64,000 nt of DNA from Podarcis melisellensis (GCA_964234715.1 OZ174282.1), one strand, 5' to 3'. Positions 5,629-56,872 are shown, numbered from the stretch's first letter. The notes: generated by a model from the sequence alone, not told the origin. Numbers and translations: made by a program.

Positions 5629-6764
5629 ATCTGCATGGACTCTCAGTGGTTCTCAGGGTTTCAGATAGGGGCCTTTCCTAGCTCTGCCTGGAGATGCTGG
5701 ACTTTAGAATCTTTGCATTTTTGCATATACTACTTCAAGACTGTTACCAAGTGAATAAGAATCATTATTGTTTGCTTCCAAGCTTGAATGTGAAATCTCT
5801 CAACTGGAGATTTCTAATCAGATTGGCACACTGTTGTTGGATTAAAAACCCAAGGTGGTGGCTGCCTTATTTGGAAGGCTTTGTGTACCAGGTTGGGAAT
5901 GGGTGGCTTGGTGGGAAGAAGAGAAGACCGCAAGTTCCTGGCTTTATGTGGGGGTCAGACGGTCAGCAAGGATGATAGAAGGCTTGCAGTTGGCTAGGGT
6001 CTGCCATCTGGCAATCATAAAACCGGCAGTACACATTTTAAAGAGGAGGAATGGCAAGGGAACAAGCTGCAGACAGTTGTCTTAAGATCCCGCCCCTTAA
6101 GCAGACACCTTTTTTAGAACTCATTTTCTCTTTGCTAGCTGGGGTGTCTGCACTGAGGGTCAAAAGTTCGCACTGTCCAGATATATTCTCTCTCTCTCCC
6201 CCCTTCCTACCTCTGTGGACAAACTTTTCCCACCCAGCCTGCAAGATAGGAACTGCAATAAGGGGGCAAAAGAATGCAGGAGAATCTGACTTCTCTAAAC
6301 CAGCCACTCCTTCCTTCCCACATAGATGGAGGAAAGATCTGATTGAGGCGATGGAGGAAAGATCTGATTGTTAGAAGTAGTTGGGAGAACAGACAAATTT
6401 CAAATGTAGCCTGAACATTTGAGAATGCTCTGGTTAGCCAAACTGGTGAAGGCACCCTCCAAAAACAATAAGCTGGCATGTTCGCCCTTTATCCATATTG
6501 TTTATGGACTGTCCCTCCCTGTTTTGTGTGCAGTCTGTTCACCTCCCCTCCACAGCAGTGTTTCCTGTAAGCCAGGTTTGAAGAATATGGCCTCCTTTGT
6601 GAGGCTTCCACTTCAACCCCATCCAGGGGATTTATGGATTCAATCAGAATACTCTCTGCCCTATAATACTCCTTAATATCAGAATGCAGCATTTCTCTTG
6701 CATATTAACAGTTTAATAAACTACCTGCACAAAGCTGTCCGTCAGGGACTCAACAATTGCACTA

Positions 6765-6987
6765 CAGTGGTACCTGTGGTTACGTACTTAATTCGTTCCA
6801 GAGGTCCGTTCTTAACCTGAAACTATTCTTAACCTGAAGCACCACTTTAGCTAATGGGGCCTCCCGCTGCCGCCACAACGCCGCACAATTTTTGTTCTCA
6901 TCCTGAAGCAAAGTTCTTAACCCGAGGTACTATTTCTGGGTTAGCGGAGTCTGTAACCTGAAGCGTGTGTAACCCAAGGTACCACTG
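6765..6987 (+). mobile_element. Tc1/mariner (Tigger/pogo-like) MITE, copy 1
   Basis: TA|cagtggtacct...aggtaccactg|TA TIRs with TA TSD; same internal sequence as four other copies. Confidence 0.92.
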
Positions 6988-7427
6988 TACTGGCTTCTCA
7001 GAATGTTGCAAGGTGTGAGGAGGGTTGGGATTTTATAGATTTTGCCATTTTGATAATTCTCTTTGTTACCATTTTGGATCCTTGTCTTGCATCCTGCAAG
7101 GGCGAAATTCAGCCAGCAGGCCTCTATATCCAGGTCTCCCAAGCCGCTTTCCCTCCCATTGCTCCCATCCCTCTGAACAGCTGTTGGTTGCCTCCCAGTC
7201 AAGGCAGCCATTTTTCTCAAATGTGTAGACACAAGGTGAGTGCCCATGAGTAAACTTGGCATTGGGACACCAACAGCTACAAGGGAGAAACACCAGCTGG
7301 CAGATAGGGACATTCTGAATATTTCAGGGATCAAAAATTCTGTACTTTATGTCAGATTCTGTGCTGGATGTGTGAATCGACAAGAGTGACATTCTGTCCA
7401 ACCCTTCTGCAAAACAACTTTTTGGGA

Positions 7428-9132: not shown

Positions 9133-10340
9133 ATTGCTTGTTTTGCTGTGGGGTTGATTTTTTTTTAAACATAGTTTGGGATCATGGACCAGAACTTTTT
9201 GAACCTTCTCTGTAAAATTCACAGTTCTAAGCTGGTTTTCATTATGACGTTGGCTTATCCCCTTAATGACATACTATGGCTTTGCATTACGTGCAGACCA
9301 GGCCCGCACAAAATAGTGATTCATTTAGAATTCTGGAGGAAGCCATGGTAGTTTCATAAATGAGTATAAACTTATACAGGTTTGTAGTGAAGATACTCCC
9401 TGCTGCTTCTCCTCCCCCACTTCAGTGAGAGCCAAGGTAGAAATTTTGGGAGAACTAGCTTGTGTGCTTACATTATCAGTTCCTTAAGCCTAGAGATAAA
9501 TATTTTGCTCTTTCAGCTGCTTTCTTTTCTTTTTAAAGTAAAGGGCGTTTCTCACACCACTGCAGAATCTTAGCAAGAGACATCAAAGCTTGTATGGCAG
9601 GAAAAGGAAGAAGGCTGGCTGGCTAAGCTTTTTTAGCATTGTGTCAGTCGCAACTGTCTATCGGAAACCACAAAAAAAGAAGCTGTGCCTTAATCTGTGT
9701 AGACCTGCAGTCACAACATGCCTTGTGCTTGTCCAAGAGGCCACTTCCTATCCAGCAGTATCCTTCTGTCCTCCCAAATGGCTACTTCCTCTTTTCAACT
9801 TCACTGGTGCAGTTCTGCTTCCGCCCCGAAGCATGTTGCTCCTCTGCTGTGCAGTCGGGACTTTCAAGCTTGGCAGCTCCTTTGCTTGCAGAAGTGAGTT
9901 CCTCTTAGGTCACGGCGTAAAGTGCATTTGCATGGGTTTGGCAAGGTGGAGGGAACGCCAATGCATCAAACCCAGTTGGCAAGAGGCCCTCTGGACGCTG
10001 TTTTAATTAGAAGCACCGTGAAAACTCCCTTTTGTGGTTTCACTTCTCAGGGCCAGAGTTGTGGGAAATGTTTTCTCCAGGTTCCAGCTGCCCTGGCTCT
10101 TTCAGGTGCATGTTCTGGCTCTTCAGATCCAGGTGAGCCTAGGTGGGGAAGGAACAAGCAAGATAGCTCAGCCTTCCAGGTGTACCTGCCTCTGCCTGTG
10201 TTCCAAAAGAGGGCAAGGTTGGGTAGGGAGCGTAGGTGCGGCCTAGATTTGGTACAAGAAGATATGTGTACTGAAATTCTCTGGCCTGTGGTTACAAAGC
10301 ACATACGCACACTTGCTAAGGAGTCAGGCAGACAAGGAAG

Positions 10341-13337: not shown

Positions 13338-14956
13338 ATGGGGGACATGTTGACTGGAATTAAAAAGCAGAATGTGCTTTCAAACCATTCCCTGTGCAGA
13401 CTGTTAAGGAGTATAAATTAAGATCCAGAGGAGGGGGTATAGCTTATCCAGTGGAGTTGCCTATCGGTGTTCATGTGCAGAATTAGGTCCCATTTCACAT
13501 GAGTACAGATTGAAATGATACCAGTTTTTAGCCAGAGTCCAGTTGCTCACGACAGAGTCCCTGAGATAGCCTTTCAGCAGAGAACAAAGTGTTCATCCCT
13601 TGACGCATGTCCCAGAAACCTCAAAAAGAAAGAAAGGGGGTGGGGGACAAAATCCAGAATCCTTACTTGAGCACTACACTTTTCCATCTATTCCGCAGGG
13701 TGCTTCTATCACTCAAAACGTCCCTTCTGCCCATCAAATGCTCTCATCCTGCCCCGCCATTGTAAAACACCCCCAGAGTTCAAAAGGTCATAGCCTTTGC
13801 ATGCCCTCCCCTACCTGCTTTTATTACTTTCCGTTGCCTTCTCATGACTTGGCATTTCATTACCATAAGCAGCTCTTGCCGAGGTATCAGACAGGTCAGG
13901 GATGGGCACTGTGTGTTTTCTCTCTCTTTTACAACACTCTCTGGTGTCTTTCTCAAGATCCCTTTATTTCTTCAGCGGCTGGACAGAGAGTATAAATAAC
14001 TCCCGAACCTTTAACACGTTTGCTGGTTACTTAAGAGAGAGTGGCTTGTTTGCTTAAGTGCTTGACAACTAAGAAGATCCCCCCCCCCCCTTAAAAGAAA
14101 AGAAAGAGGGAGGTGCACATCTCCTGAAACCTATTGTTGTGGGATTTTAAAAGTCTCTTGTCTCTAATAAAACAAAGGGGAGTGAAGGAGGGCACCAAGG
14201 GAAGAAGGGATTTTGTCTCCTATCCAGCCAAAACCTTCCCAAAATGGGGTTCTTCACTATAATCTGCTTCTCTTTCAAATATAATAAGAACAGTACAGAA
14301 GCAACATTAAAGCAGATTTGATTTTAAAATGTAGGTCAAACTGCAGCAACTCAGTTTGGGTATGTGCATGTGTGTGCACATATTATTATTACGTATTTTT
14401 AAATCTGCATAAAGTTTAAGTATTGAAATGTATTTTTGGCCTGCTTCACATCATCAGTAGCCTGCTGGGTCCTAACAGAGCCGGCAAGTGCAGTGGGGAA
14501 GCTCTCAGCTTTGTTCAGAAGGGCAGTCACGATTAAAATGTTACCACAATGGTTATGAATTCTAAGAAAAACACATAGCCAGAATTTATTTTAAATGATC
14601 CATGGGGGTGCCCTGAAAGAGGTTATGGCACCATAATGACTGGTGCACTCTTTCTTTTGCTTAGGCTTTTGTGAATCAACTCCCACGTCGTCAGTGGGCT
14701 GTAGTACCTTGTGCTGCAACAAATTTGTTGTTTTTACAGGTGCTGCAAGAGCTCCCATTGTTATTGTCATTTCAAACTGAAATGACTGCACTTCTAGAAT
14801 TAAATGAGATTGAGATTTTATGCGTGTGTGAGAAAAAAGGAAAAGGGAGTCATGCCAGTTATGATTAAAAGTCAGGAGATTGACAAAAACAGAGAAAATG
14901 GCAGTATGATGCAAAACCATGTTTTTTTCTATACTATGTATTGAAACTATACTGTA

Positions 14957-15174
14957 CAGTGGTACCTCAGGTTACAGACGCTTCAGGTTACAGACTCTGC
15001 TAACCCAGAAATAGTACCTCAGGGTAAGAACTTTGCTGCAGGATGAGAACAGAAATCGCGCAGCAGCGGCAGCAGGAGGCCCCATTAGCTAAAGTGGTAC
15101 CTCAGGTTAAGAACAGTTTCAGGTTAAGAATAGACCTCCAGAACAAATTAAGTTCTTAACCAGAGGTACCACTG
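14957..15174 (-). mobile_element. Tc1/mariner (Tigger/pogo-like) MITE, copy 2, opposite orientation to copy 1
   Basis: TA|cagtggtacctc...gaggtaccactg|TA. Confidence 0.92.
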
Positions 15175-15633
15175 TACTTTGTATTTTTCGTATTTTATTA
15201 TTAGGCAGAGTTGGGGTTTCTTAATTGGTGGTTGTAAACTGCTTTGTGGAAAAAAATTCCTCAAAAAGCAGACCATGCAGTTTTTAGCAAATAAAATTTT
15301 TTGCTTATTCCAAACAAGTTTGACCAGTATATAAAATACATATTTATTTGTGTTTCATGATATGAGTTCTAGTCATGATCCAGAATTCATTGTTTGTGTG
15401 TTTGATGCGAGAGACTACTGAAAGGAAAAGTTTGAGCAGCCTTATGCTAATTCCCTAAACTGCTTTTTTAAATTCAAAGAGTTTATTTTTAAAAAACACA
15501 GTGTGTGTTTCAGGTGAACTGCTGAAAGGAAAATTCACAGAATAACTTTGGTGTGCAAGTAGATGCCATGCACACATGCGTATTGATCTTTGACTCCATT
15601 TAACTGAGTGCCAATAAGCAGGTAGGATTCTGT

Positions 15634-22162: not shown

Positions 22163-22310
22163 NNNNNNNNNNNNNNNNNNNNNNNNNNNNNNNNNNNNNN
22201 NNNNNNNNNNNNNNNNNNNNNNNNNNNNNNNNNNNNNNNNNNNNNNNNNNNNNNNNNNNNNNNNNNNNNNNNNNNNNNNNNNNNNNNNNNNNNNNNNNNN
22301 NNNNNNNNNN
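22163..22310. other. Assembly gap (148 N)
   Basis: Run of N. Confidence 1.
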
Positions 22311-23045: not shown

Positions 23046-24434
23046 TTTTTTTTTAATATTTTTATTAGTTTTTTACACATATTAGTGACAATACAAAACA
23101 AACACAAACATCAAAAACAAACAACAAAAATTGACTTCCCCATGCCTTCCCTTCGCCACATCCTTGTTTTACCATTTTTCGAGCAACTCATCAATCAGTC
23201 TTTAGTTAAGTCCCTTTTGAATTTCCTTAAGATTTAAGATTTACAGCTGTAGTTCTTTGTTTCCTACCCCTTAACATCTTATCAGTCCACAATTTTACAA
23301 TAATTTTTTAGATATGTTTTAAATTTCCCCCAGTCCTCTTCCACTGTCTCTTTCCTCTGGTCGCGGATTCTGCCAGTCATCTCTGCCAGTCCCATATATT
23401 CCATCACCTTCGATTGCCATTCTTCCAGAGTAGGTAATTCTTGCATCTTCCAATACTTTGCCAACAGGATTCTTGCTGCCGTGGTTGCATACATAAAGAA
23501 TGTCTTATCCTTCTTTGATACCAATTGGCCGACCATGCCCAAGAGAAAAGCCTCCGGTTTCTTTACAAATGTCCACTTAAGGACTTTCTTAATTTCATTA
23601 TAGATCATTTCCCAGTAGGCCTTAATCTTTGGGCAGGTCCACCAAAGATGGTAAAAGGTACCTTCAGCCTCATTACATTTCCAACATTTATTATTGGGCA
23701 GATGGTAAATCTTTGCAAGTTTGACTGGGGTCATGTACCACCTATAGATCATTTTCATTATATTCTCTTTCAGGGCATTACATGCCGTAAATTTAACACC
23801 GGTGGTCCATAACTGTTCCCAGTCGTCAAACATAATGTCATGACCAATATCCTGTGCCCATTTAATCATAGCTGATTTCACTGTTTCATCCTGTGTATTC
23901 CATTTCAGCAGCAAATTATACATTTTAGATAAGTTTTTAGTATTGGATTCTAACAATTCTGTTTCTAACTTTGACCTCTCCTTCTGAAAACCAAGTTTCC
24001 TGTCCTGCTTAAACATCTCATTTATCTGACGGTAATGTAACCAGTCTCGAACTTTATGCTTTAGCTTCTCAAAACTTTGTAGCTTCAATCTTTCGCCATC
24101 ATATTCTAAAATTTCACAGTACTTAGGCCAATTAGAGTCCATGTTAATTTTTTTCACTGCTTTCGCTTCCATTGGTGACAACCACCTAGGGGTTTTACTT
24201 TCCAATAAATCCTTATATCTATTCCAAACATTATACAATGCTTTCCTGACAATATGGTTCTTAAAACTTTTATACACCTTTACCTTGTCATACCACAAAT
24301 ATGCATGCCAACCAAAACTATTGTCATATCCTTCCAGATCAAGAATGTCTGTATCTTCAAGAAGTAGCCATTGCTTCAACCAGCAAAAGGCTGCTGATTC
24401 ATAGTAAAGTCTTAAGTCTGGCAGGGCAAAGCCC
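23046..24434 (-). mobile_element. L1-clade LINE, 5' truncated and young
   Basis: ORF2 C-terminus, 3'UTR, AATAAA and poly(A) (poly-T on +); 17-bp TSD cctctgtttttgttttt at 23029-23045 and 24435-24451. Confidence 0.93.
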
Positions 24435-24439
24435 CCTCT
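23282..24439 (-). pseudogene. L1 ORF2p C-terminal fragment (385 uninterrupted codons; post-RT GGxxLP motif and Cys-rich CWKC...HLWWTC region)
   Basis: RGGFALPDLRLYY...CWKCNEAEGTFYHLWWTCPKIKAYW in the ORF track; endonuclease and RT core are absent. Confidence 0.88.
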
Positions 24440-24454
24440 GTTTTTGTTTTTGAA

Positions 24455-24858
24455 CCATCTAGTCCAGCATGGATCAGGCCAAAAGCCCATGTAATCCAGC
24501 ATTCTGCTGTCACAGTGGCCAATCAGATTCCCCAATAGAAGCCTTCAAACAGGACCTGAGTGTGACATCGCTCTCCCTAATTGTGACTCTTAGCAACTGG
24601 CTTTCAGAGGCATACTGCATACATACATACATACATACATACATACATACATACATACAGTGGAGGTAGCACACACAATCTTGGCTAGTAGCCATTGATA
24701 GCCTAATTCCCTGTAAAATTGCCTAAAAGCCATTCAAGTTGGTGGCCATCACTACATTTTCTCGTAGCAAATTCCATGCTTTAATGATGCAGTGTGTGGA
24801 AGTACTTCCTCTTTTCTACCCTGAGTCTCCCACCATTCAGTTTAGCTGGATTTCCCCC
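24455..24858 (-). mobile_element. CR1 LINE 3' fragment containing an (ATAC)n expansion
   Basis: ccatctagtccagcat...tcacagtggccaatcaga...agcaactgg...caagttggtggccatcactaca...ttccatgctttaat; matches the reverse of 4566-4928. Confidence 0.8.
24619..24659. repeat. (ATAC)n microsatellite
   Basis: Direct reading, about 10 units. Confidence 0.95.
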
Positions 24859-26128: not shown

Positions 26129-27595
26129 TAGTTACTGATTTATAAGTGGTTTTTTTAAACAGCGTATAGGATTAAAAGGGAGTGGGGAAGGTCTGATATG
26201 TGGTGTTTGCCTTTCTCAGTAGATAGTTGAGGAAAACCACACATGCCGAATTAAAAAAAAATGCAGCAGAGTGCAGGTTTTTGCCATGTGCACACGCCTT
26301 TTCTAGATAAATGTCTTCCTGTGACTTTAAGAATGTCTGCAAAATGAGTCAGCTCAGCTACAGGAGGCGTCAGACAGGCCAGGCAGACTGAGGGAGATGG
26401 GTGGGGGAGGGTGATGGCAAGGGAGGAGGTGGAGGGAGTGCGCTCAGAGGACAGAACAGCCACAGTCTGGGCTCTCAGCCTCCTGGCTAGACTGTAGAAA
26501 CTTCTAATGGAGCTCCTGAGCTCAGCTCTCCACCCTCCCCTTCCTGAAGCTTGGCTGGAGGGGAGGGGAGGGGGGAACCTGGCTGGCTTTTTTGTCATCC
26601 TCTTCCACTGCACAGTGACCTTGCCTGCAAATAGCACACAGGAATTCAGAAGGGGCGTCTTACACTTGGAGTATTGGTACAGGCAGAAAATGAGTGTACA
26701 CATGAATGAATGAATAAAATATATAAATAAATAAATCAGAGTAGGAATCTCATTCTGTTGCAACACAGTTTTTCGTTCTGTGCTGAAAAACATGTCTTGG
26801 TGTGCTGTTTTAATATAAATCAGAGAGAGCTTATTCTGTCCTCCCCCCCCCCCACTTTCATTTCATCTGATTGCTTCTTTTGCAGTCTCCAAACATTTTC
26901 ATCAAGGTAGCAGGCAAGTGGGTATATTTTTTTTAGGAAGGTGCCCCTCTTGGGGGTGGGGGTGAACTATGTGGATAAACAAGGAAGAAATTATCCAGTT
27001 ACTCTGAACTGTGTCTGTATCAATGTGACATAAGGAAATTAGTGATCACTTTGTGTGTAAAGTGTTCACATAAAGCAGAATTCAGACATTGAATATTAAA
27101 AGGTGGACAGGTTGAAAATGTACATAGTGTGAAATGAGGAAATTAGAGATTTTAAAGTGTTTTTACATAAACACTTAAGCAAAAATTTTAGTCTTAAAAT
27201 ATATGCATAGGGGACAAGTAGATATGGTTTTACGTTTTCTGCTTTAAAATATTTTAAATTTTCCCTTCCCTGGACAAGTTTTAAAAAATAATGATTTGAC
27301 CTATTGCATTACAGGATTTCCTAACTTTTTAATTTAATTTAATTTTTAAAGAGTACTTCACTCTGAGTTCAGGGTTACATTGGAGTTCCATTTCTGAAAT
27401 ATTTTCACCCCTTTAAAATACCGTATTTTTCGCTCCATAGGACGCACTTTTTCCCCTCCAAAAATGAAGGGGAAATGTGTGTGCGTCCTATGGAGCGAAT
27501 GCAGGCTCCCTGGCTTCAGCGATAGCAAGGCAAAGCCTCGAAGCCTGCGCTCCGGAGGCTTCCCGTTGCTTCCGCTGAAGCCAGGAGAGTCTGCT

Positions 27596-28115
27596 CTTTG
27601 AGGCTGGCGGGGGGAAAGCAGCGCTTCCCCCATCGCCAGCCCCAGAGGATGGGGGGCAGCAGGAAGGCGCGCAATGCCTTCCCGCACCTCCCCAACCTGC
27701 CTTTGAGGCTGGCGGGGGGAAAGCAGCGCTCCCCCCATCGCCAGCCCCAGAGGATGGGGGGCAGCAGGAAGGCGCGCAATGCCTTCCCGCACCTCCCCAA
27801 CCTGCCTTTGAGGCTGGCGGGGGGAAAGCAGCGCTCCCCCCATCGCCAGCCCCAGAGGATGGGGGGCAGCAGGAAGGCGCGCAATGCCTTCCCGCACCTC
27901 CCCAACCTGCCTTTGAGGCTGGCGGGGGGAAAGTAGCGCTCCCCCCATCGCCAGCCCCAGAGGATGGGGGGCAGCAGGAAGGCGCGCAATGCCTTCCCGC
28001 ACCTCCCCAACCTGCCTTTGAGGCTGGCGGGGGGAAAGCAGCGCTTCCCCCATCGCCAGCCCCAGAGGATGGGGGGCAGCAGGAAGGCGCGCGACGCCTT
28101 CCCGCTACTCTCCAA
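27596..28115. repeat. 105-bp GC-rich tandem repeat, ~4.9 units
   Basis: ctttgaggctggcgggggg starts at 27596, 27701, 27806, 27911 and 28016. Confidence 0.97.
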
Positions 28116-28120
28116 CCCTC

Positions 28121-29080
28121 CTGCAGGCTTTTGCGGGAGATGGGGGAATTCCCCCACCTCCCGCAAAAGCAGGCAAAAGCCGTGCGCTCTTTAAAGAGGC
28201 TGCACGGCTTTGCTGGCTTTTGCGGGAGGTGGGGGAATTCCCCCACCTCGCAGAAAAGCCTGCAAGAGCCCCGCAGCCTTTAAAGAGCGCACGGCTCTTG
28301 GGGGCTTTTCCCCAAGGAGGGAGAAGGGACTGACTGGCCGAGTCAGTCCCTTCTCCCTCCTGCAGGCTTTTGCGGGAGATGGGGGAATTCCCCCACCTCC
28401 CGCAAAAGCAGGCAAAAGCCGTGCGCTCTTTAAAGAAGCTCCGTGGCTTCTGCTGGCTTTTCTAGGAGGTGGGGGAATTCCCCCACCTCGCAGAAAAGCC
28501 TGCAAGAGCCCCGCAGCCTTTAAAGAGCGCACGGCTCTTGGGGGCTTTTCCCCAAGGAGGGAGAAGGGACTGACTGGCCGAGTCAGTCCCTTCTCCCTCC
28601 TGCAGGCTTTTGCGGGAGATGGGGGAATTCCCCCACCTCCCGCAAAAGCAGGCAAAAGCCGTGCGCTCTTTAAAGAAGCTCCGTGGCTTCTGCTGGCTTT
28701 TCTAGGAGGTGGGGGAATTCCCCCACCTCGCAGAAAAGCCTGCAAGAGCCCCGCAGCCTTTAAAGAGCGCACGGCTCTTGGGGGCTTTTCCCCAAGGAGG
28801 GAGAAGGGACTGACTGGCCGAGTCAGTCCCTTCTCCCTCCTGCAGGCTTTTGCGGGAGATGGGGGAATTCCCCCACCTCCCGCAAAAGCAGGCAAAAGCC
28901 GTGCGCTCTTTAAAGAAGCTCCGTGGCTTCTGCTGGCTTTTCTAGGAGGTGGGGGAATTCCCCCACCTCGCAGAAAAGCCTGCAAGAGCCCCGCAGCCTT
29001 TAAAGAGCGCACGGCTCTTGGGGGCTTTTCCCCAAGGAGGGAGAAGGGACTGACTGCCGTTTCAGTCCCTTCTCCCTCCT
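28121..29080. repeat. 240-bp palindrome-rich tandem repeat, 4 units
   Basis: ctgcaggcttttgcgggagatggggg starts at 28121, 28360, 28600 and 28840; units 2-4 nearly identical. Confidence 0.97.
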
Positions 29081-29589
29081 GATCGAAAAGCCCGCAGGAG
29101 TCAAGCGGGGCTCCTGTGGGCTTTTGCGGGAGGTGGGGGAATTCCCCCACCTCGCGCAAAAGCAGGGAGGTCTTGGAGTAGCGCACAGCTGCGTGCAGCC
29201 TGTCCACTGCTCCCAGAGCGGGGGGGGGAATCATATTTTTTCCTTGATTTCCCCCCCTGAAAACTAGGTGCGTCCTATGGTCCGGTGCGTCCAATCGTGC
29301 GAAAAATACGGTAACCTTTTCACAATAAACACTGTCCAGACATTATGCCCAAACAGGAAATATCATCTAGTATTGGGGCATTGGGGCCGTATTTACCAGC
29401 CCTGACTTCTCTGATGTTGACCTTCTCATTCTCAGCAAGGAGACTGAAAGGGGATTATCATCATTCACTTGAATGCGAGTAGAAGCCTCTCTGCAATTGG
29501 TAACCCTGATGAAACAGGTTTCTTCATACCACAGAGGCCTCTACACATATTCAAATGAACACAGACCTTCCCTGCTCAACACATGATGA

Positions 29590-29993: not shown

Positions 29994-30734
29994 AACATAG
30001 GTTGATATTTCCTTTTTGTGGCGTAACACCTGAACACACTTCTGTCAGATGACTCAAATAGCTACGGGGAGGGAGTAAACGTCGGTGTTATTGACTGTTC
30101 ATCTCCTGCTTTCTTGCTGATTTTACAAACAAATTGGCTTCTTGTTACTGAATCCTGAAGTTAACCTTTAGCCAGTATATTAAAAGGACAGATTCACAGA
30201 AGCAGGTTGTTCCACCTGCTTTCTTTCACTACCCTTTATTGTGTAATCTGTGACTGTGCCAGATGCTTCTTCAGACGTATATTAGAAATGTGTAATGTGT
30301 AAGAAAGGGAAAATTGATTATGCAGAAGTGGCTTTAATTAAAACTTGTTTTTCACGTCTGCTCTCCTTTGTTTATGTCTGTGTGGCAAGGCAACGCCACT
30401 CCCTGTAGTGGGAACTTCTTGGAGAAGTTCAGCTGCTGGTGCAATCAAAGGTAATTTTGTTTGTGCAAGATATTTATCTCTGAAGCAATGGCGAAGAATA
30501 GGGGTTAAGGAGAGGACAGGAGGCAGAAAGCACAGTGCCTCCACCTGACTGTCAATCCTTATAACTTTTTAATGGCTTCCTAATGGAGTCCAATGCCATT
30601 CTGTCTTGAGGTTTCCTGAAGTACATTGGTTACTGCAGTTCTACAGTGACTTAAGGAATGAATGACAGCAAGCACTGATCCAAATAGTTGATGCATCAAT
30701 TTGAGCATTTACCATTTAGTAGCTGCCTAATTCC

Positions 30735-31108
30735 GGGACGCAGGTGGCGCTGTGGGTTAAAGCCTCAGCTCCTAGGACTTGCCGATCGAAAGGTCGGCGG
30801 TTCGAATCCCTGCGGCGGGGTGCGCTCCCGCTGCTCGGTCCCAGCGCCTGCCAACCTAGCAGTTCGAAAGCACCTCCGGGTGCAAGTAGATAAATAGGGA
30901 CCGCTTACCAGCGGGAAGGTAAATGGCGTTTCCGTGTGCGGCTCTGGCTCGCCAGAGCAGCGATGTCACGCTGGCCACGTGACCCGGAAGTGTCTCCGGA
31001 CAGCGCTGGCCCCTGGCCTCTTAAGTGAGATGGGCGCACAACCCCAGAGTCTGTCAAGACTGGCCTGTACGGGCAGGGGTACCTTTACCTTTACCTTTAC
31101 CTTTACCT
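30735..31108 (+). mobile_element. Sauria SINE, full length and young
   Basis: Intact head, ggttcgaatccc box, CpGs preserved, (ACCTTT)4+ tail, 14-bp TSD tagctgcctaattc (30720-30733 and 31109-31122). Confidence 0.96.
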
Positions 31109-31930: not shown

Positions 31931-32286
31931 ATAGGAAGCCGCCTTATGTAGAGTCATGCCACTGGTCTATCTAGCTCTATATTGTCTACACTAGGAGCAG
32001 CTCTCCAGGGTTTCGGACTCAGAGGATATTCCCAGCACCACCCGGAGATGCCAGGGATTGAACCTAGGACCTTCTGCATGCAAGGTGGGTGCTCTAACCA
32101 CTGAGCTACGACCCTTCCCTTAAGACATAGGAAGCTGCCTTATACTGAATCTGTCTAGCTCAGTATTGTCTGCATGCCAAGGTTTCATGAAGGGGTCTCT
32201 CCTGGCCCTACCTGGAGATGACAGGGATTGAACTTAGGACCTTCTGCATGTGAAGCATGCTCTATTGCTGAGCTATGGCACTTTCC
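31931..32286 (-). mobile_element. Two tandem copies of the tRNA-derived SINE with CR1-like tail (~31931-32119 and ~32125-32286)
   Basis: ataggaagc.gccttat ... gggattgaac.taggaccttctgcatg ... ctgagcta.g twice. Confidence 0.85.
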
Positions 32287-32394
32287 CACCTGGGTAATGT
32301 TGTTTCAGCCTCACCAGGGAAATTTGAGAGGGCTTAAGACCTCTAATTTTTTGTGTGTGTGCAACAGATTCTCTTCTTGATTACCTCTTTTTGT

Positions 32395-33201
32395 TTCTCT
32401 TTTAATGGCCATTACCAAAATACTTTTACAATGAATTTTTTGTCTTTTCTTCTAACCTCAGTGGGTCATAGTGACTTTAAAACTTCTAGAAGTATATCCT
32501 AGTCAGTTCCGTCTAGACTATTTCATTATCTAATCTGATAATCACAACAAGGTGGAATGTCTGTGGAACTTTGTATCTCATTTTTACAGTTTCATAATTA
32601 TCACTTCAAGATCACTGTCAAAGTACACCACCTATCTATATCCCTATTTGCAGCTATATTGTGAGGTGGGTTCTTGTGCCCATTTTACATATGAGAAACT
32701 GAGCTTTACTTTAATGGTAATCTAAGACCACAGGCATGACTTTCTCTTTAAATGCCCATTACCAAAATACTTTTACAATGAATTTTTTGTCTTTTCTTCT
32801 AACCCCAATGGGTCATAGTGACTCTAAAACTGCTAGAAGTATATCCTAGTCAGTTCCGTCTAGACTATTTTTTGTCTTTTCTTCTAACCCCAATGGGTCA
32901 TAGTGACTTTAAAACTGCTAGAAGTATATCCTAGTCAGTTCTGTCTAGACTATTTCATTATCTAATCTGATAATCACAACAAGTGGAATGTCTGTGGAAC
33001 TTTGTATCTCATTTTTACAGTTTCATAATTATCACTTCAAGATCACTGTCAAAGTACACCACCTATCTGTATCCCTCATTGCAGCTACTTTGTGAGGTGG
33101 GTTCTTGTGCCCATTTTACATATGAGAAACTGAGCTTTACTTTAATGTAATTTAATGTTACTTTAAGTTTAAGGTAATCTAAGACCACAGGCATGACTTT
33201 C
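32395..33201. repeat. Local tandem duplication (period 347 bp) with a nested 85-bp re-duplication
   Basis: cattaccaaaatac at 32410 and 32757; gtcttttcttctaacc at 32789 and 32874; few substitutions between copies. Confidence 0.95.
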
Positions 33202-33365: not shown

Positions 33366-33684
33366 AAAGTAACCCTGGATGGTTAATTCCAGTCAAAGGC
33401 GACTATGGGGTGCGGCGTTCATCTCGCTTCAGGCCGAGGGAGCCGGCATTTGTCCACAGACAGCTTTCCGGGTCATGTGGCCTGCATGACTAAACTGCTT
33501 CTGGCGCAACAGAACACCATGACAGAAGCCAGAGCACACGGAAACACTGTTTACCTTCCTGCCACAGCGATACCTATTTATCTACTTGCATTAGTGTGCT
33601 TTCGAAGTGCTAGGTTGGCAGAAACTGGGACAGAGCAATGGGAGCTCACCACTGTCACACAGATTCGAACCGCCGATCTTCTGA
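33366..33684 (-). mobile_element. Sauria SINE, slightly 5' truncated
   Basis: Reverse complement of the SINE body: ggccgagggagccggc...gggtcatgtggcc...tttaccttcc...gctaggttggcag...gattcgaaccgccga. Confidence 0.9.
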
Positions 33685-35408
33685 ATGTGGCTATACCAAG
33701 TTCAGTGAAATCTGTGTTTATTTCCTAAGGTCCCTAGTGGTGCTGTCTATAACACCACAGGTTCTTTTTGAGATTTTAACACCAGCCCAAGCTAGGATGG
33801 GTCTAACAGGGTGCAATAATCTATTCTTTTCAACCCACACACCCATGAATTTGGTGTAGGGCAGGGTGGAAAGAGGCAAGAGAGAGTACCAACACAGGTT
33901 AAAGATCTAGGCACGTGTGGAATGCAGGGGTTATCTGACCCCCTGCAAAACCTCTGTGCAAATGAATTCTTAGACTAACCTTGGAGAATTTATGAACCAA
34001 TATCTGTGAATAGCGGTATCTGAAAAGCAATTTTGTCTTGATAAATGAGGGGCGGGTGCACAACCAAGTCTGGGTGGAATCGCTCAGTGATGACAAAGCC
34101 TGGAAAGATTTATTTAGGCAAGTTGCAGTAATGATTTACTATGATAATGGTCATCTACACATTCAGAATACGTTCTCTTATGCATGCTGAGGAATTTGGG
34201 TGTACAGTAGACGATTCCTTCCCTCACTACAATTTAATTCATAAATATTTCCCTTTGTGGGGGCGGGGAGAAGGGAAGGTCTCCCACCTTGTCAGCTTGC
34301 TTTTCTACTCTCTGTATGTACATATCCACCAGAAGGAAGCAAAATGGTAAAGGGAATAAATTATTAGATCTGTGGAAAACGGTACCAGTTTCAAATGAAA
34401 AATGGCACATCATTCACTCTAGGAACAGCCAAGCATCCTCTACTTGAATTTGGGCCATTTAAAAAATGTTTTGAGAAGAGGGAGTGGAAGAAGCAGAGAG
34501 GTATGATGATTATATGCAGATTTCTTTTCTGAGCCTAGTTTTATTTCAGAAAGTTTTCAAGTATTATCAAAGTTGATTAAGAAATGTGCCTTGTTTTCCT
34601 TAAAAATAGGAGGCCATCTAATCTATATACCTACCTAGCAGGCTGTCTTGCCAGCCAGCCATCAGCATCTCTTTTTGAGTAACAAGCTATCATCTTCCAC
34701 AGTTGTTACCTTTTTGACAATACCATTTCCTTGAGAGGGCATCTAAAAGAAGCCGTGCTGAGTACTCGCTTACAAAAGGTTACATTGAACCAAGTCTCCT
34801 TAAGTGACATAATGAATATGAATACTGGGAGTAGGAAGCGTGCAAACAGTCATGAATCCTTGCTCAGTTCAAATGGAAAGATGGCAGAACCTGAGGGTTG
34901 TGTATGTATAGATCAAGCTAGCTAACATGGGAATCAACCTTATACCAGGTTAGATATATGGATGTTAAACAGCTTAGGGGACAGACTGTAGCGCTTCACA
35001 GCAAACTTCCACAAGACTCTCATGATCCTATTTTCTGGAAGCAACTCTGCAAGTAAGAGGGGAACCACCATAGCATTGTTCCTCCAACTCTCAACTCACA
35101 GAGACATGTCAGTAAGGTATAGTTACTCCAAAAAAGGTATTCCTCAAAGGGCCATACCTCTGTGGTATAGTTCACAGAGTAAGGGGCATTAGAAAAGTTC
35201 TGGTGGCAAAAGCTGTCCCTTTTCAATTCATGGTAGGGAGTTTTTTTATTCTGTTTTGCTGAAAACAATCTTGCCTCCTCCAGTTTCCATGCCACCCAGT
35301 TCAGAAAAATCCAGCATAAAGGGAAAGAAGATTCCTTAAACGGCAGTTCATGACCTTCCTTTTCTGTTTTTAGCTAACTACGGGTGCTTTTCATTGCTGA
35401 AAAGTATA

Positions 35409-35623
35409 CAGTGGTACCTCGGGTTAAGAACTTAATTCGTTCTGGAGGTCCATTCTTAACCTGAAACAGTTCTTAACCTGAGATACCACTTTAGGTAATG
35501 GGGCCTCCTGCTGCTGCCACGCAATTTCTGTTCTCATCCTGAAGCAAAGTTCTTAACCCGAAGTACTATTTCTGGGCTAGCGGAGTCTGTAACCTGAAGC
35601 GTCTGTAACCCGAGGTACCACTG
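35409..35623 (+). mobile_element. Tc1/mariner (Tigger/pogo-like) MITE, copy 3
   Basis: TA|cagtggtacctcgggtta...taacccgaggtaccactg|TA. Confidence 0.93.
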
Positions 35624-35763
35624 TATGGAGAAAGCAAAAGTTGCCTCTGTGCTTGCAGTTGTGTCTGGCCCTGTTGTGGGATGGACCACCCCAGGACTCA
35701 TCCAACTTTAGAATGTATCTGATCCAGATACTCATATTGTGGAACAGCCTCTGATTTGGTGTA

Positions 35764-40258: not shown

Positions 40259-40795
40259 CAGGGGCAAGGAACCCCATTCAGCCCAAGGGCTGCATTCTAT
40301 GATGGGGAAGCTGGGGGTGGGGGCAATATGTCAGTGGTGGGTGGAACCAGAGTCGAAGGAGCCAGAGCACCAGATGTGACTTTTGCCTTTGTATATTAGG
40401 TTACAGTGGTACCTCGGGTTAAGTACTTAATTTGTACTAGAGGTCTGTTCTTAACCTGAAACTGTTCTTAACCTGAAGCACCACTTTAGCTAATGGGGGC
40501 CACCTGCTGCTGCTGTGCCACCGGAGCACAATTTCTGTTCTCATCCTGAAGCAAAGTTCTTAGCCCGAGGTATTATTTCTGGGTTAGCAGAGTCTGTAAC
40601 CTGAAGCGTATATAACCTGAAGTGTATGTAACCCGAGGTACCACTGTATATTCCCAGCACAAAAGTCATTAAAAAATGTGAGCTTATACCCCAACTAGGC
40701 AAAGCACTGCATGTTGGATGCCGACTGGGACAGGCAAGGGTTGTGGCCTGAACAGAATTTCAGGGGCCAGATAGAAGGCCTGGGGGCTGCTTCTG
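40259..40795 (+). mobile_element. Degenerate hAT-like element interrupted by MITE copy 4
   Basis: caggggcaaggaacc start; gatgtgacttttgcctttgta and ggggccagatagaaggcc shared with 595-1255. Confidence 0.5.
40404..40646 (+). mobile_element. Tc1/mariner (Tigger/pogo-like) MITE, copy 4, with a short internal duplication
   Basis: TA|cagtggtacctcgggtta...aacccgaggtaccactg|TA; taacctgaag.gta repeated near the right end. Confidence 0.93.
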
Positions 40796-56458: not shown

Positions 56459-56872
56459 TGGAAAAGGGGTGTGGCTAGGTCTTAGAGCACATACTTTGTG
56501 TGCAGAAGACCCTAGGTTCAGTCCCCAGCATCTCCAGGTAGGGCTGGGAGAGAAACCTGTCTGAAATCCTAGAGAGCTGCTGCTAGTCAGTGTAGACAAT
56601 ACTGAGGTTGGTGGATTTGGGATAAAGCTGCTTCCTATACAGTGGTACCTCGGGTTACATACGCTTCAGGTTACAGACTCCGCTAACCCAGAAATAGTAC
56701 CTCGGGTTAAGAACTTTGCTTCAGGATGAGAACAGAAATTGTGCTCCAGCGGTGTAGCAGCAGTGGGAGGCCCCATTAGCTAAAGTGGTGCTTCAGGTTA
56801 AGAACAGTTTCAGGTTAAGAACGGACCAACGGAACGAATTAAGTACTTAACCCGAGGTACCACTGTGTTCCC
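56459..56872 (+). mobile_element. tRNA-derived SINE with CR1-like tail, interrupted at its tail by MITE copy 5
   Basis: ggttcagtccccagcatctccaggtagggctggg...gtagacaatactgag...gcttcctata[MITE]tgttcc. Confidence 0.8.
56640..56865 (-). mobile_element. Tc1/mariner (Tigger/pogo-like) MITE, copy 5
   Basis: TA|cagtggtacctcgggtta...taacccgaggtaccactg|TG; the right TSD deviates. Confidence 0.92.

What the first reader, a model, noticed from the sequence alone, without database searches (positions are those of the whole stretch)
27421..29311. Tc2/pogo-like MITE acting as a vehicle for two satellite-like arrays
Seen: a 1,891-bp element with TA TSD, 27-bp TIRs and extra TIR-core copies (an 18-bp perfect fold-back, 27430-27447 with 27481-27498). 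About 80% of its length is two different tandem arrays, and it forms a GC/CpG-rich island in AT-richer surroundings. CpGs are barely decayed, so it is young, recently homogenised or unmethylated. Established: MITEs with internal tandem repeats can seed satellite DNA. Inference: a mobile, length-variable minisatellite and CpG-island delivery system that may be undescribed in lacertids.
Basis: partly seen in the sequence, partly recalled or inferred. Interest (0 to 1): 0.72.

Follow-up and report, generated by a model that had tools for sequence, protein, structure and literature searches.

The report
Lizard transposon carrying two hairpin-repeat arrays
This is a real 1.9-kb non-coding cut-and-paste transposon in a lizard genome. 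Almost four fifths of it is two tandem arrays of GC-rich, hairpin-forming units, a kind of element already known from frogs, clams and flies, so it is an ordinary example and not a new system.

Summary
At 27421-29311 there is an 1,891-bp element flanked by TA on both sides. Its inverted ends match 13/13 at the termini and 23/27 overall, and there are two extra copies of a 13-nt end motif.

Inside are a 105-bp x5 array and a 240-bp x4 array, which make up 79% of the length. GC is 62% against 41-43% in the flanks. Every part between the ends folds far better than shuffled sequence, and the flanks do not. There is no coding capacity and no Rfam match.

I read it as a non-autonomous, TA-targeting (Tc1/mariner-superfamily) transposon. 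Its interior hairpin modules were tandemly amplified, and some of that is very recent: three 240-bp units are 100% identical.

The "Tc2-like" label has only weak support. The first 6-8 bases of the end match Anolis TcMar-N4/N6/N13, and the source paper calls N4 Tc2-related.

Copy number, unit-number variation, satellite seeding, methylation and a partner transposase could not be tested. CpG o/e is 0.54, below the usual island cut-off.

Repeat-carrying MITEs are a known kind (miDNA4, Xstir, DTC84, FEDoR). This scan has already noted several similar elements on other DNA of the same genome. Verdict: new member of a known kind, modest interest.

The parts
27419..27420 (.). Left copy of the TA target-site duplication
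   Evidence: TA directly outside the left end, matched by TA at 29312-29313. Longer or shifted TSDs (3, 4 or 8 bp) do not fit the flanks.
27421..27447 (+). Left terminal inverted repeat: a 13-nt terminus followed by the 13-nt core motif
   Evidence: 13/13 terminal and 23/27 overall match to the reverse complement of 29285-29311. The terminal 13-mer is found perfect only at the two ends.
27481..27499 (-). Inverted, truncated copy of the end, lacking the outermost 8 nt. It forms a 19-bp perfect fold-back with 27429-27447.
   Evidence: The left 180 nt fold as ssDNA at -67.8 kcal/mol, z -13.9.
27501..27592 (.). Unique long hairpin module between the left end and array A
   Evidence: Fold of 27421-27600: a continuous stem-loop covering these positions.
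27591..28117 (.). Array A: 105-bp unit x5.0, GC 70%. Each unit holds two hairpins.
   Evidence: TRF gives 97% matches, score 989. Units 2 and 3 are identical. The two edge units share a variant that the inner units lack. Unit fold z -3.4.
28116..29081 (.). Array B: 240-bp unit x4.0, GC 60%. Each unit is two diverged ~90-bp palindrome-bearing sub-units plus ~60 bp with two more hairpins.
   Evidence: TRF gives 98% matches, score 1855, with an 89-90 bp sub-period at 80-82%. Units 2, 3 and most of 4 are 100% identical, and unit 1 differs only in a 28-nt patch. Unit fold -103.4 kcal/mol, z -16.6. Palindrome map.
29082..29267 (.). Unique right interior with further quasi-palindromes, including one more copy of the 44-nt palindrome of array B at 29120-29163
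   Evidence: Sliding fold z -6.7 for 29071-29220.
29268..29280 (-). Inner copy of the 13-nt end-core motif at the right end, direct with respect to the degenerate outer copy
   Evidence: The gapped alignment of the two ends shows 17 extra bases in the right end between the terminal 13 nt and this perfect core copy. Those bases hold the degenerate outer core copy at 29285-29297.
29285..29311 (-). Right terminal inverted repeat
29312..29313 (.). Right copy of the TA target-site duplication

Best explanation
It is a non-autonomous cut-and-paste DNA transposon of the TA-targeting Tc1/mariner superfamily, inserted into AT-rich, TE-rich non-coding lizard DNA.

Only its ends are likely to matter for movement: the 27-nt inverted repeats and the repeated 13-nt core motif, which are presumed binding sites for a transposase supplied in trans.

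The interior is free-running cargo made of GC-rich quasi-palindromic modules. Two of these modules were tandemly amplified, to 5 x 105 bp and 4 x 240 bp. The likely mechanism is replication slippage, unequal sister exchange, or template switching during gap repair, all of which hairpin-forming DNA favours.

The last rounds of amplification are very recent or were recently homogenised, because the inner units are identical while the edge units differ.

Shown: the anatomy, the lack of coding capacity, and that the hairpin and GC character stop exactly at the ends. Inferred: mobilisation in trans, the mechanism of array growth, and that the arrays travelled with the element.
For: - TA TSD plus inverted ends at far above chance level.
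- GC jumps from about 27-29% to 55-70% exactly at the ends.
- Sliding 150-nt ssDNA folds score z -3 to -11 in 12 of the 13 windows centred between the ends. The last window, which mostly spans the right end and flank, scores -1.6. The flanks score -2.3 to +1.4.
- Two arrays at 97-98% identity, with identical inner units and variant edge units.
- ORFs across the arrays give only sub-threshold repeat-summed Pfam noise. No Rfam family matches inside the element.
- The kind is documented: miDNA4, Xstir, DTC84 and FEDoR (PMC12628747, PMC3879986, PMC12054243).
- Lizard Tc1/mariner non-autonomous families with a TA TSD and ends starting CYGTAT are catalogued in Anolis (PMC3014272, Table 2).
- Unchecked notes of this scan describe similar elements elsewhere in the same genome.
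Against: - No second copy, empty site or partner transposase could be examined, so mobility and family membership rest on one copy.
- The two ends are asymmetric: a fold-back on the left, a direct duplication on the right.
- At 1.9 kb it is too long to be a MITE in the strict sense.
- The end starts with CC, not the CA typical of many Tc1/mariner elements.
- 100% identical units could also reflect an assembly error in unit number.
Confidence: 0.8

Rival explanations
1. Composite origin: the arrays were resident genomic tandem repeats, or cargo of another element, that became bracketed by two independent end fragments. One such fragment could be a tiny ~80-bp fold-back element at 27421-27499, paired with an unrelated right end. 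On this reading the unit never moved as a whole.
For: The left end is a self-contained fold-back, with the end plus an inverted truncated end. The two ends are built differently. Double insertions are a known route to TE-linked arrays (PMC5932611, abstract listed).
Against: TA lies on both outer sides and the 13-nt termini are perfect. GC and hairpin character change exactly at the outer ends, not at the inner fold-back arm. The inner left copy lacks the terminal 8 nt, so it is not a complete end.
Confidence: 0.07
2. It is a foldback-type or FEDoR-like element, with paired forward and reverse inverted-repeat sites around arrays. On this reading it is not a Tc1/mariner derivative, and it would be mobilised or spread by another route.
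For: The left end has the forward-reverse arrangement described for frog FEDoR. Like FEDoR, the element is not AT-rich, is kilobase-sized and carries arrays (PMC12054243). The whole interior is palindromic.
Against: The right end has two same-orientation core copies, not a forward-reverse pair. The TA TSD and short ends that begin like Anolis TcMar-N families fit Tc1/mariner (PMC3014272).
Confidence: 0.08
3. The element is real, but the number of array units, and perhaps their perfect identity, is an assembly artefact.
For: Units B2, B3 and most of B4 are 100% identical over about 700 bp, and A2 equals A3. Such repeats are error-prone in assembly. There is an N gap 5 kb away at 22163-22310.
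Against: The edge units carry distinct variants in an orderly pattern, and the junctions are clean. No read data could be obtained either way.
Confidence: 0.1
4. The GC-rich hairpin block has a host-level function, as an unmethylated CpG island or regulatory module, or as a source of hairpin-derived small RNAs. That function, not selfish spread, would explain its preservation.
For: GC and CpG are higher than in the surroundings. The hairpins are very stable.
Against: CpG o/e of 0.54 is below the 0.6 criterion over the element and both arrays. No Rfam match. No host exon or promoter was recognised nearby. The neighbours are L1, SINE and MITE copies. There are no expression or methylation data.
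Confidence: 0.05

Closest known systems
miDNA4-Xt of Xenopus tropicalis (Tc1/mariner MITE carrying a satellite motif; Scalvenzi and Pollet 2014, as summarised in PMC12628747 and PMC12054243)
   Same: Vertebrate, TA-type Tc1/mariner non-autonomous element with short inverted ends around an internal tandem repeat that can be amplified.
   Different: miDNA4 is 300-600 bp and AT-rich, has one repeat type, and usually has a single monomer. This element is 1.9 kb and 62% GC, and has two unrelated arrays built from palindromes. Variation between copies is not shown here.
DTC84 and pearl-type tandem-repeat MITEs of bivalves (PMC3879986)
   Same: Flanking 'cassette' with inverted repeats around up to five core repeats. 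The units carry a palindrome proposed as a hotspot for copy-number change. Edge and inner units are ordered variants.
   Different: DTC84 has an AA putative TSD, a linked microsatellite, very short inverted repeats and one repeat type. The host phylum is different.
FEDoR of Rana temporaria (PMC12054243)
   Same: Kilobase-sized, not AT-rich, non-coding, with arrays between inverted-repeat sites. Forward and reverse sites lie close together at the left end.
   Different: FEDoR is about 3.5 kb, has forward-reverse pairs at both ends, and could not be assigned to Tc1/mariner. Here the right end has direct copies and the TSD is TA.
Anolis carolinensis TcMar-N4, N6 and N13 non-autonomous families (PMC3014272, Table 2)
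   Same: Lizard host, TA TSD, 22-25-nt ends beginning CYGTAT, and no similarity to any resident autonomous element. The paper says N4 resembles a Tc2-related frog element.
   Different: Only the first 6-8 bases agree. The Anolis families are 168-661 bp. In the passages that my term search of that paper returned, no internal array or minisatellite is mentioned.
Tetris and other foldback transposons of Drosophila (PMC4079207)
   Same: DNA transposon whose internal or terminal tandem repeats supply building blocks for an emerging satellite.
   Different: In Tetris the repeats lie within long inverted ends. Here the ends are short and the arrays are central. No derived satellite is shown here.

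Membership tests
Tc1/mariner (ITm) superfamily, non-autonomous element | TA target-site duplication | tested here: met
   TA at 27419-27420 and 29312-29313. Alternative TSD lengths do not fit.
Tc1/mariner (ITm) superfamily, non-autonomous element | Terminal inverted repeats | tested here: met
   13/13 terminal and 23/27 overall. The terminal 13-mer is perfect only at the two ends, with 0.43 hits expected at up to 2 mismatches.
Tc1/mariner (ITm) superfamily, non-autonomous element | No transposase gene | tested here: met
   ORFs over the arrays give only sub-threshold, repeat-summed Pfam noise with no single stretch passing.
Tc1/mariner (ITm) superfamily, non-autonomous element | Multiple dispersed copies with the same ends, and empty sites showing mobility | not testable with these tools
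Tc2/pogo clade | Ends matching an autonomous element that encodes a pogo/Tc2-type DDE transposase | tested here: inconclusive
   Only a literature comparison was possible. The first 6-8 bases equal Anolis TcMar-N4/N6/N13, and N4 is called Tc2-related (PMC3014272). No autonomous element was available.
Tigger-type pogo elements | Ends of the CAG...ACCTCG type | tested here: not met
   This element starts CCGTAT. A different 225-bp TA-flanked MITE family in the same window does carry the CAGTGGTACCTCGGG type of end.
MITE in the strict sense | Small size (about 100-800 bp) | tested here: not met
   It is 1,891 bp. Without the arrays the chassis is about 400 bp, and about 745 bp with one unit of each array.
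Tandem-repeat-carrying MITEs (miDNA4 / DTC84 / Xstir type) | Inverted-repeat cassette around a central tandem array | tested here: met
Tandem-repeat-carrying MITEs (miDNA4 / DTC84 / Xstir type) | Unit number varies between copies of the family | not testable with these tools
   No second copy could be obtained.
Satellite DNA | Long arrays of the unit independent of the transposon ends | tested here: not met
   None in the 64-kb window; the longest match of any part of the element elsewhere is 17 nt. Genome-wide status is not testable.
CpG island (Gardiner-Garden and Frommer criteria) | Length over 200 bp, GC at least 50%, CpG o/e at least 0.6 | tested here: not met
   Length and GC are met, but o/e is 0.54 overall, 0.50 in array A and 0.47 in array B. 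Only two 300-bp edge windows reach 0.64-0.66.

The most novel reading that the evidence does not exclude
This copy belongs to a lacertid-wide modular system. In it, a few transposon 'chassis' (this CCGTAT-ended one, plus Tigger-like and hAT shells) exchange and disperse interchangeable GC-rich palindrome arrays. These arrays would seed minisatellites or satellites and GC/CpG-rich blocks across gene regions, with the hairpins themselves promoting both array growth and cargo swapping between shells.
Probability: 0.15. Interest if true: 0.55.

Novelty: new member of a known kind. Interest (0 to 1): 0.3.

Why it matters
It is a clean vertebrate example of a DNA transposon whose cargo is almost wholly tandemly amplified hairpin DNA. 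Elements like this are one documented route from mobile elements to satellite DNA, and they create length-polymorphic, structure-prone GC-rich blocks inside AT-rich regions. If the family proves abundant and variable in wall lizards, it would be useful as a marker system and as a model for how palindromes drive array growth. As a single copy it does not change what is known.

Tried and rejected
- Other copies in the window: none for the ends or any interior module.
- That stretch was covered only by reference-based local scans: Rfam over the whole window, Pfam on the ORFs, and folding.
- Coding reading of the long ORFs across the arrays: rejected. Both periods are multiples of 3, which keeps the frames open, and the Pfam hits are noise.
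- Structured-RNA family: none found.
- Similarity of the two ends beyond 27 nt: not above shuffles.
- Host gene context: 27 long ORFs outside the element were scanned. The only Pfam hit is one sub-threshold match on 9590-10006, and an L1 ORF2 tail was identified against solved structures.
- Literature on lacertid or Podarcis repeat-carrying MITEs: nothing found. One query was malformed.
- Alternative TSDs (3, 4 and 8 bp) were rejected by reading the flanks.

Full report
**Observation**

Reading 27200-29550 shows an element that begins at 27421 and ends at 29311, with TA immediately outside on both sides. The outermost 13 bases are identical at both ends in inverted orientation, and the 27-nt ends agree at 23 positions. 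Allowing two mismatches, the terminal 13-mer has three hits in 64 kb against 0.43 expected from shuffles. The two perfect hits are the ends themselves.

A 13-nt core motif just inside the terminus occurs four times:
- once in the left end (27435, +);
- once inverted 33 nt further in (27481, -), giving a perfect 19-bp fold-back that lacks the terminal 8 nt;
- twice in direct order at the right end (29268 perfect, 29285 degenerate).

A gapped alignment of the two ends places 17 extra bases in the right end, between the terminal 13 nt and the perfect core copy. Those bases hold the degenerate outer core copy. Beyond the ends the two termini are no more alike than shuffles.

Tandem Repeats Finder gives 105 bp x5.0 (27591-28117, 97%) and 240 bp x4.0 (28116-29081, 98%), together 79% of the element.

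GC is 62% against 41-43% in the 5-kb flanks and under 30% just outside the ends. CpG o/e is 0.54 against 0.21-0.32 in the flanks. The one weak point is the phrase that CpGs are barely decayed. An o/e of 0.54 misses the usual 0.6 island criterion, and a young tRNA-derived SINE 1.4 kb downstream reaches 0.8-1.0.

**Anatomy of the interior**

As single-stranded DNA the 240-bp unit folds at -103.4 kcal/mol against -44.3 for shuffles (z -16.6). The left 180 nt fold at z -13.9, and the 105-bp unit at z -3.4.

In a sliding 150-nt scan, 12 of the 13 windows centred between the ends score z -3 to -11. The last window, which mostly covers the right end and flank, scores -1.6. All flanking windows lie between -2.3 and +1.4, so the hairpin character starts and stops with the element.

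The 240-bp unit is itself compound. It holds two diverged ~90-bp sub-units, each with a 44-54-nt palindrome around a GAATTC centre. It also holds about 60 bp containing a short hairpin and a perfect 21-bp-stem hairpin. One more copy of the 44-nt palindrome sits in the unique right interior (29120-29163).

Units B2, B3 and the first 221 nt of B4 are 100% identical. B1 differs from them only in one 28-nt patch. In array A, units 2 and 3 are identical, and the two edge units share a variant that the inner units lack.

Identical inner units with variant edge units are the usual signature of recent in-array expansion or homogenisation by unequal exchange. The clustered patch in B1 looks more like a conversion or template-switch event than point-mutation decay, but that is inference.

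**What it is not**

Long ORFs cross the arrays because both periods are multiples of three. Their Pfam hits are sub-threshold sums of repeated fragments. Rfam finds nothing inside the element. No part of the element recurs elsewhere in the window; the longest match is 17 nt.

**Surroundings**

The neighbourhood is transposon-rich non-coding DNA:
- an L1 ORF2 C-terminal fragment at 23282-24535 (E 1e-11 to solved L1 ORF2p chains);
- a young tRNA-type SINE with its own target duplication at about 30730-31100;
- five copies of a 225-bp TA-flanked MITE with Tigger-type ends.

None of the 27 long ORFs scanned outside the element shows a host protein domain above threshold. Gene context is unresolved, because short exons would be missed.

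**Interpretation**

The TA duplication, the short inverted ends, the repeated subterminal motif and the lack of coding capacity fit a non-autonomous member of the Tc1/mariner superfamily moved in trans. The interior is cargo. Two hairpin modules were amplified in tandem, most plausibly by slippage, unequal sister exchange or gap-repair template switching, all of which palindromes promote. The same argument was made for the palindrome at the unit junction of DTC84 (PMC3879986).

The Tc2/pogo label rests only on the terminus. Anolis TcMar-N4, N6 and N13 have a TA TSD and ends that start CYGTAT, and N4 was reported to resemble the Tc2-related frog element DNA5_Xt (PMC3014272). The element here shares the first 6-8 bases with them. 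It does not have the Tigger-type end seen in the other MITE family of this window. I rate Tc1/mariner superfamily membership as likely and Tc2 affinity as open.

**Comparison with what is known**

Repeat-carrying MITEs and their role in seeding satellites are well described:
- Xstir and miDNA4 in Xenopus, DTC84 and pearl in bivalves, Tetris in Drosophila, and Helentron cargo in oysters (PMC12628747, PMC9659126, PMC3879986, PMC4079207, PMC7492417);
- most recently the 3.5-kb FEDoR of the grass frog, which pairs forward and reverse inverted-repeat sites around arrays (PMC12054243).

This element differs in degree only. It is longer, GC-rich, carries two unrelated arrays, and is built almost wholly from quasi-palindromes.

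I found no paper describing such elements in lacertids. Dfam and Repbase could not be consulted.

This scan's own unchecked notes list several similar 'hairpin-array' transposons on other pieces of the same genome, which those notes take to be a wall lizard. So the scan has seen this kind before on other DNA.

**Limits**

The claims that would make the finding interesting need other copies or reads. These claims are a length-variable family, TIR-less arrays, a partner transposase, recent insertion, and methylation state.

**Verdict**

It is a new member of a known kind, of modest interest.

Noticed in passing
window 6764-6989, 14955-15176, 35408-35629, 40403-40623, 56638-56866: Five copies (85-92% alike) of a ~225-bp TA-flanked MITE with Tigger/pogo-type ends (CAGTGGTACCTCGGG...). 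The copy at 35408 has a rearranged interior. This is a different family from the element studied.
   Followed up: partly
window 23282-24535 (-): A 417-codon open frame that is the C-terminal part of an L1 ORF2 protein. It matches residues ~864-1252 of solved L1 ORF2p chains at E 1e-11. An assembly gap (N) lies just beyond it at 22163-22310.
   Followed up: yes
window ~30730-31100: Young tRNA-derived SINE with an (ACCTTT)n-like tail and a ~14-nt target duplication. CpG o/e is 0.8-1.0. Older, diverged copies lie at 851-993 and 33366-33680.
   Followed up: partly
window 32394-33155: Local tandem duplication of a ~431-bp segment (95-97% identity), next to a tRNA-like Rfam hit at 32043-32115 that is probably a SINE head.
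   Followed up: no
window 28198-28226 versus 28438-28466: The only difference between the first 240-bp unit and the later ones is a 28-nt cluster of about 10 changes inside a quasi-palindrome. Part of it reads like a short inverted segment, which suggests a template-switch or conversion patch more than point mutations.
   Followed up: partly
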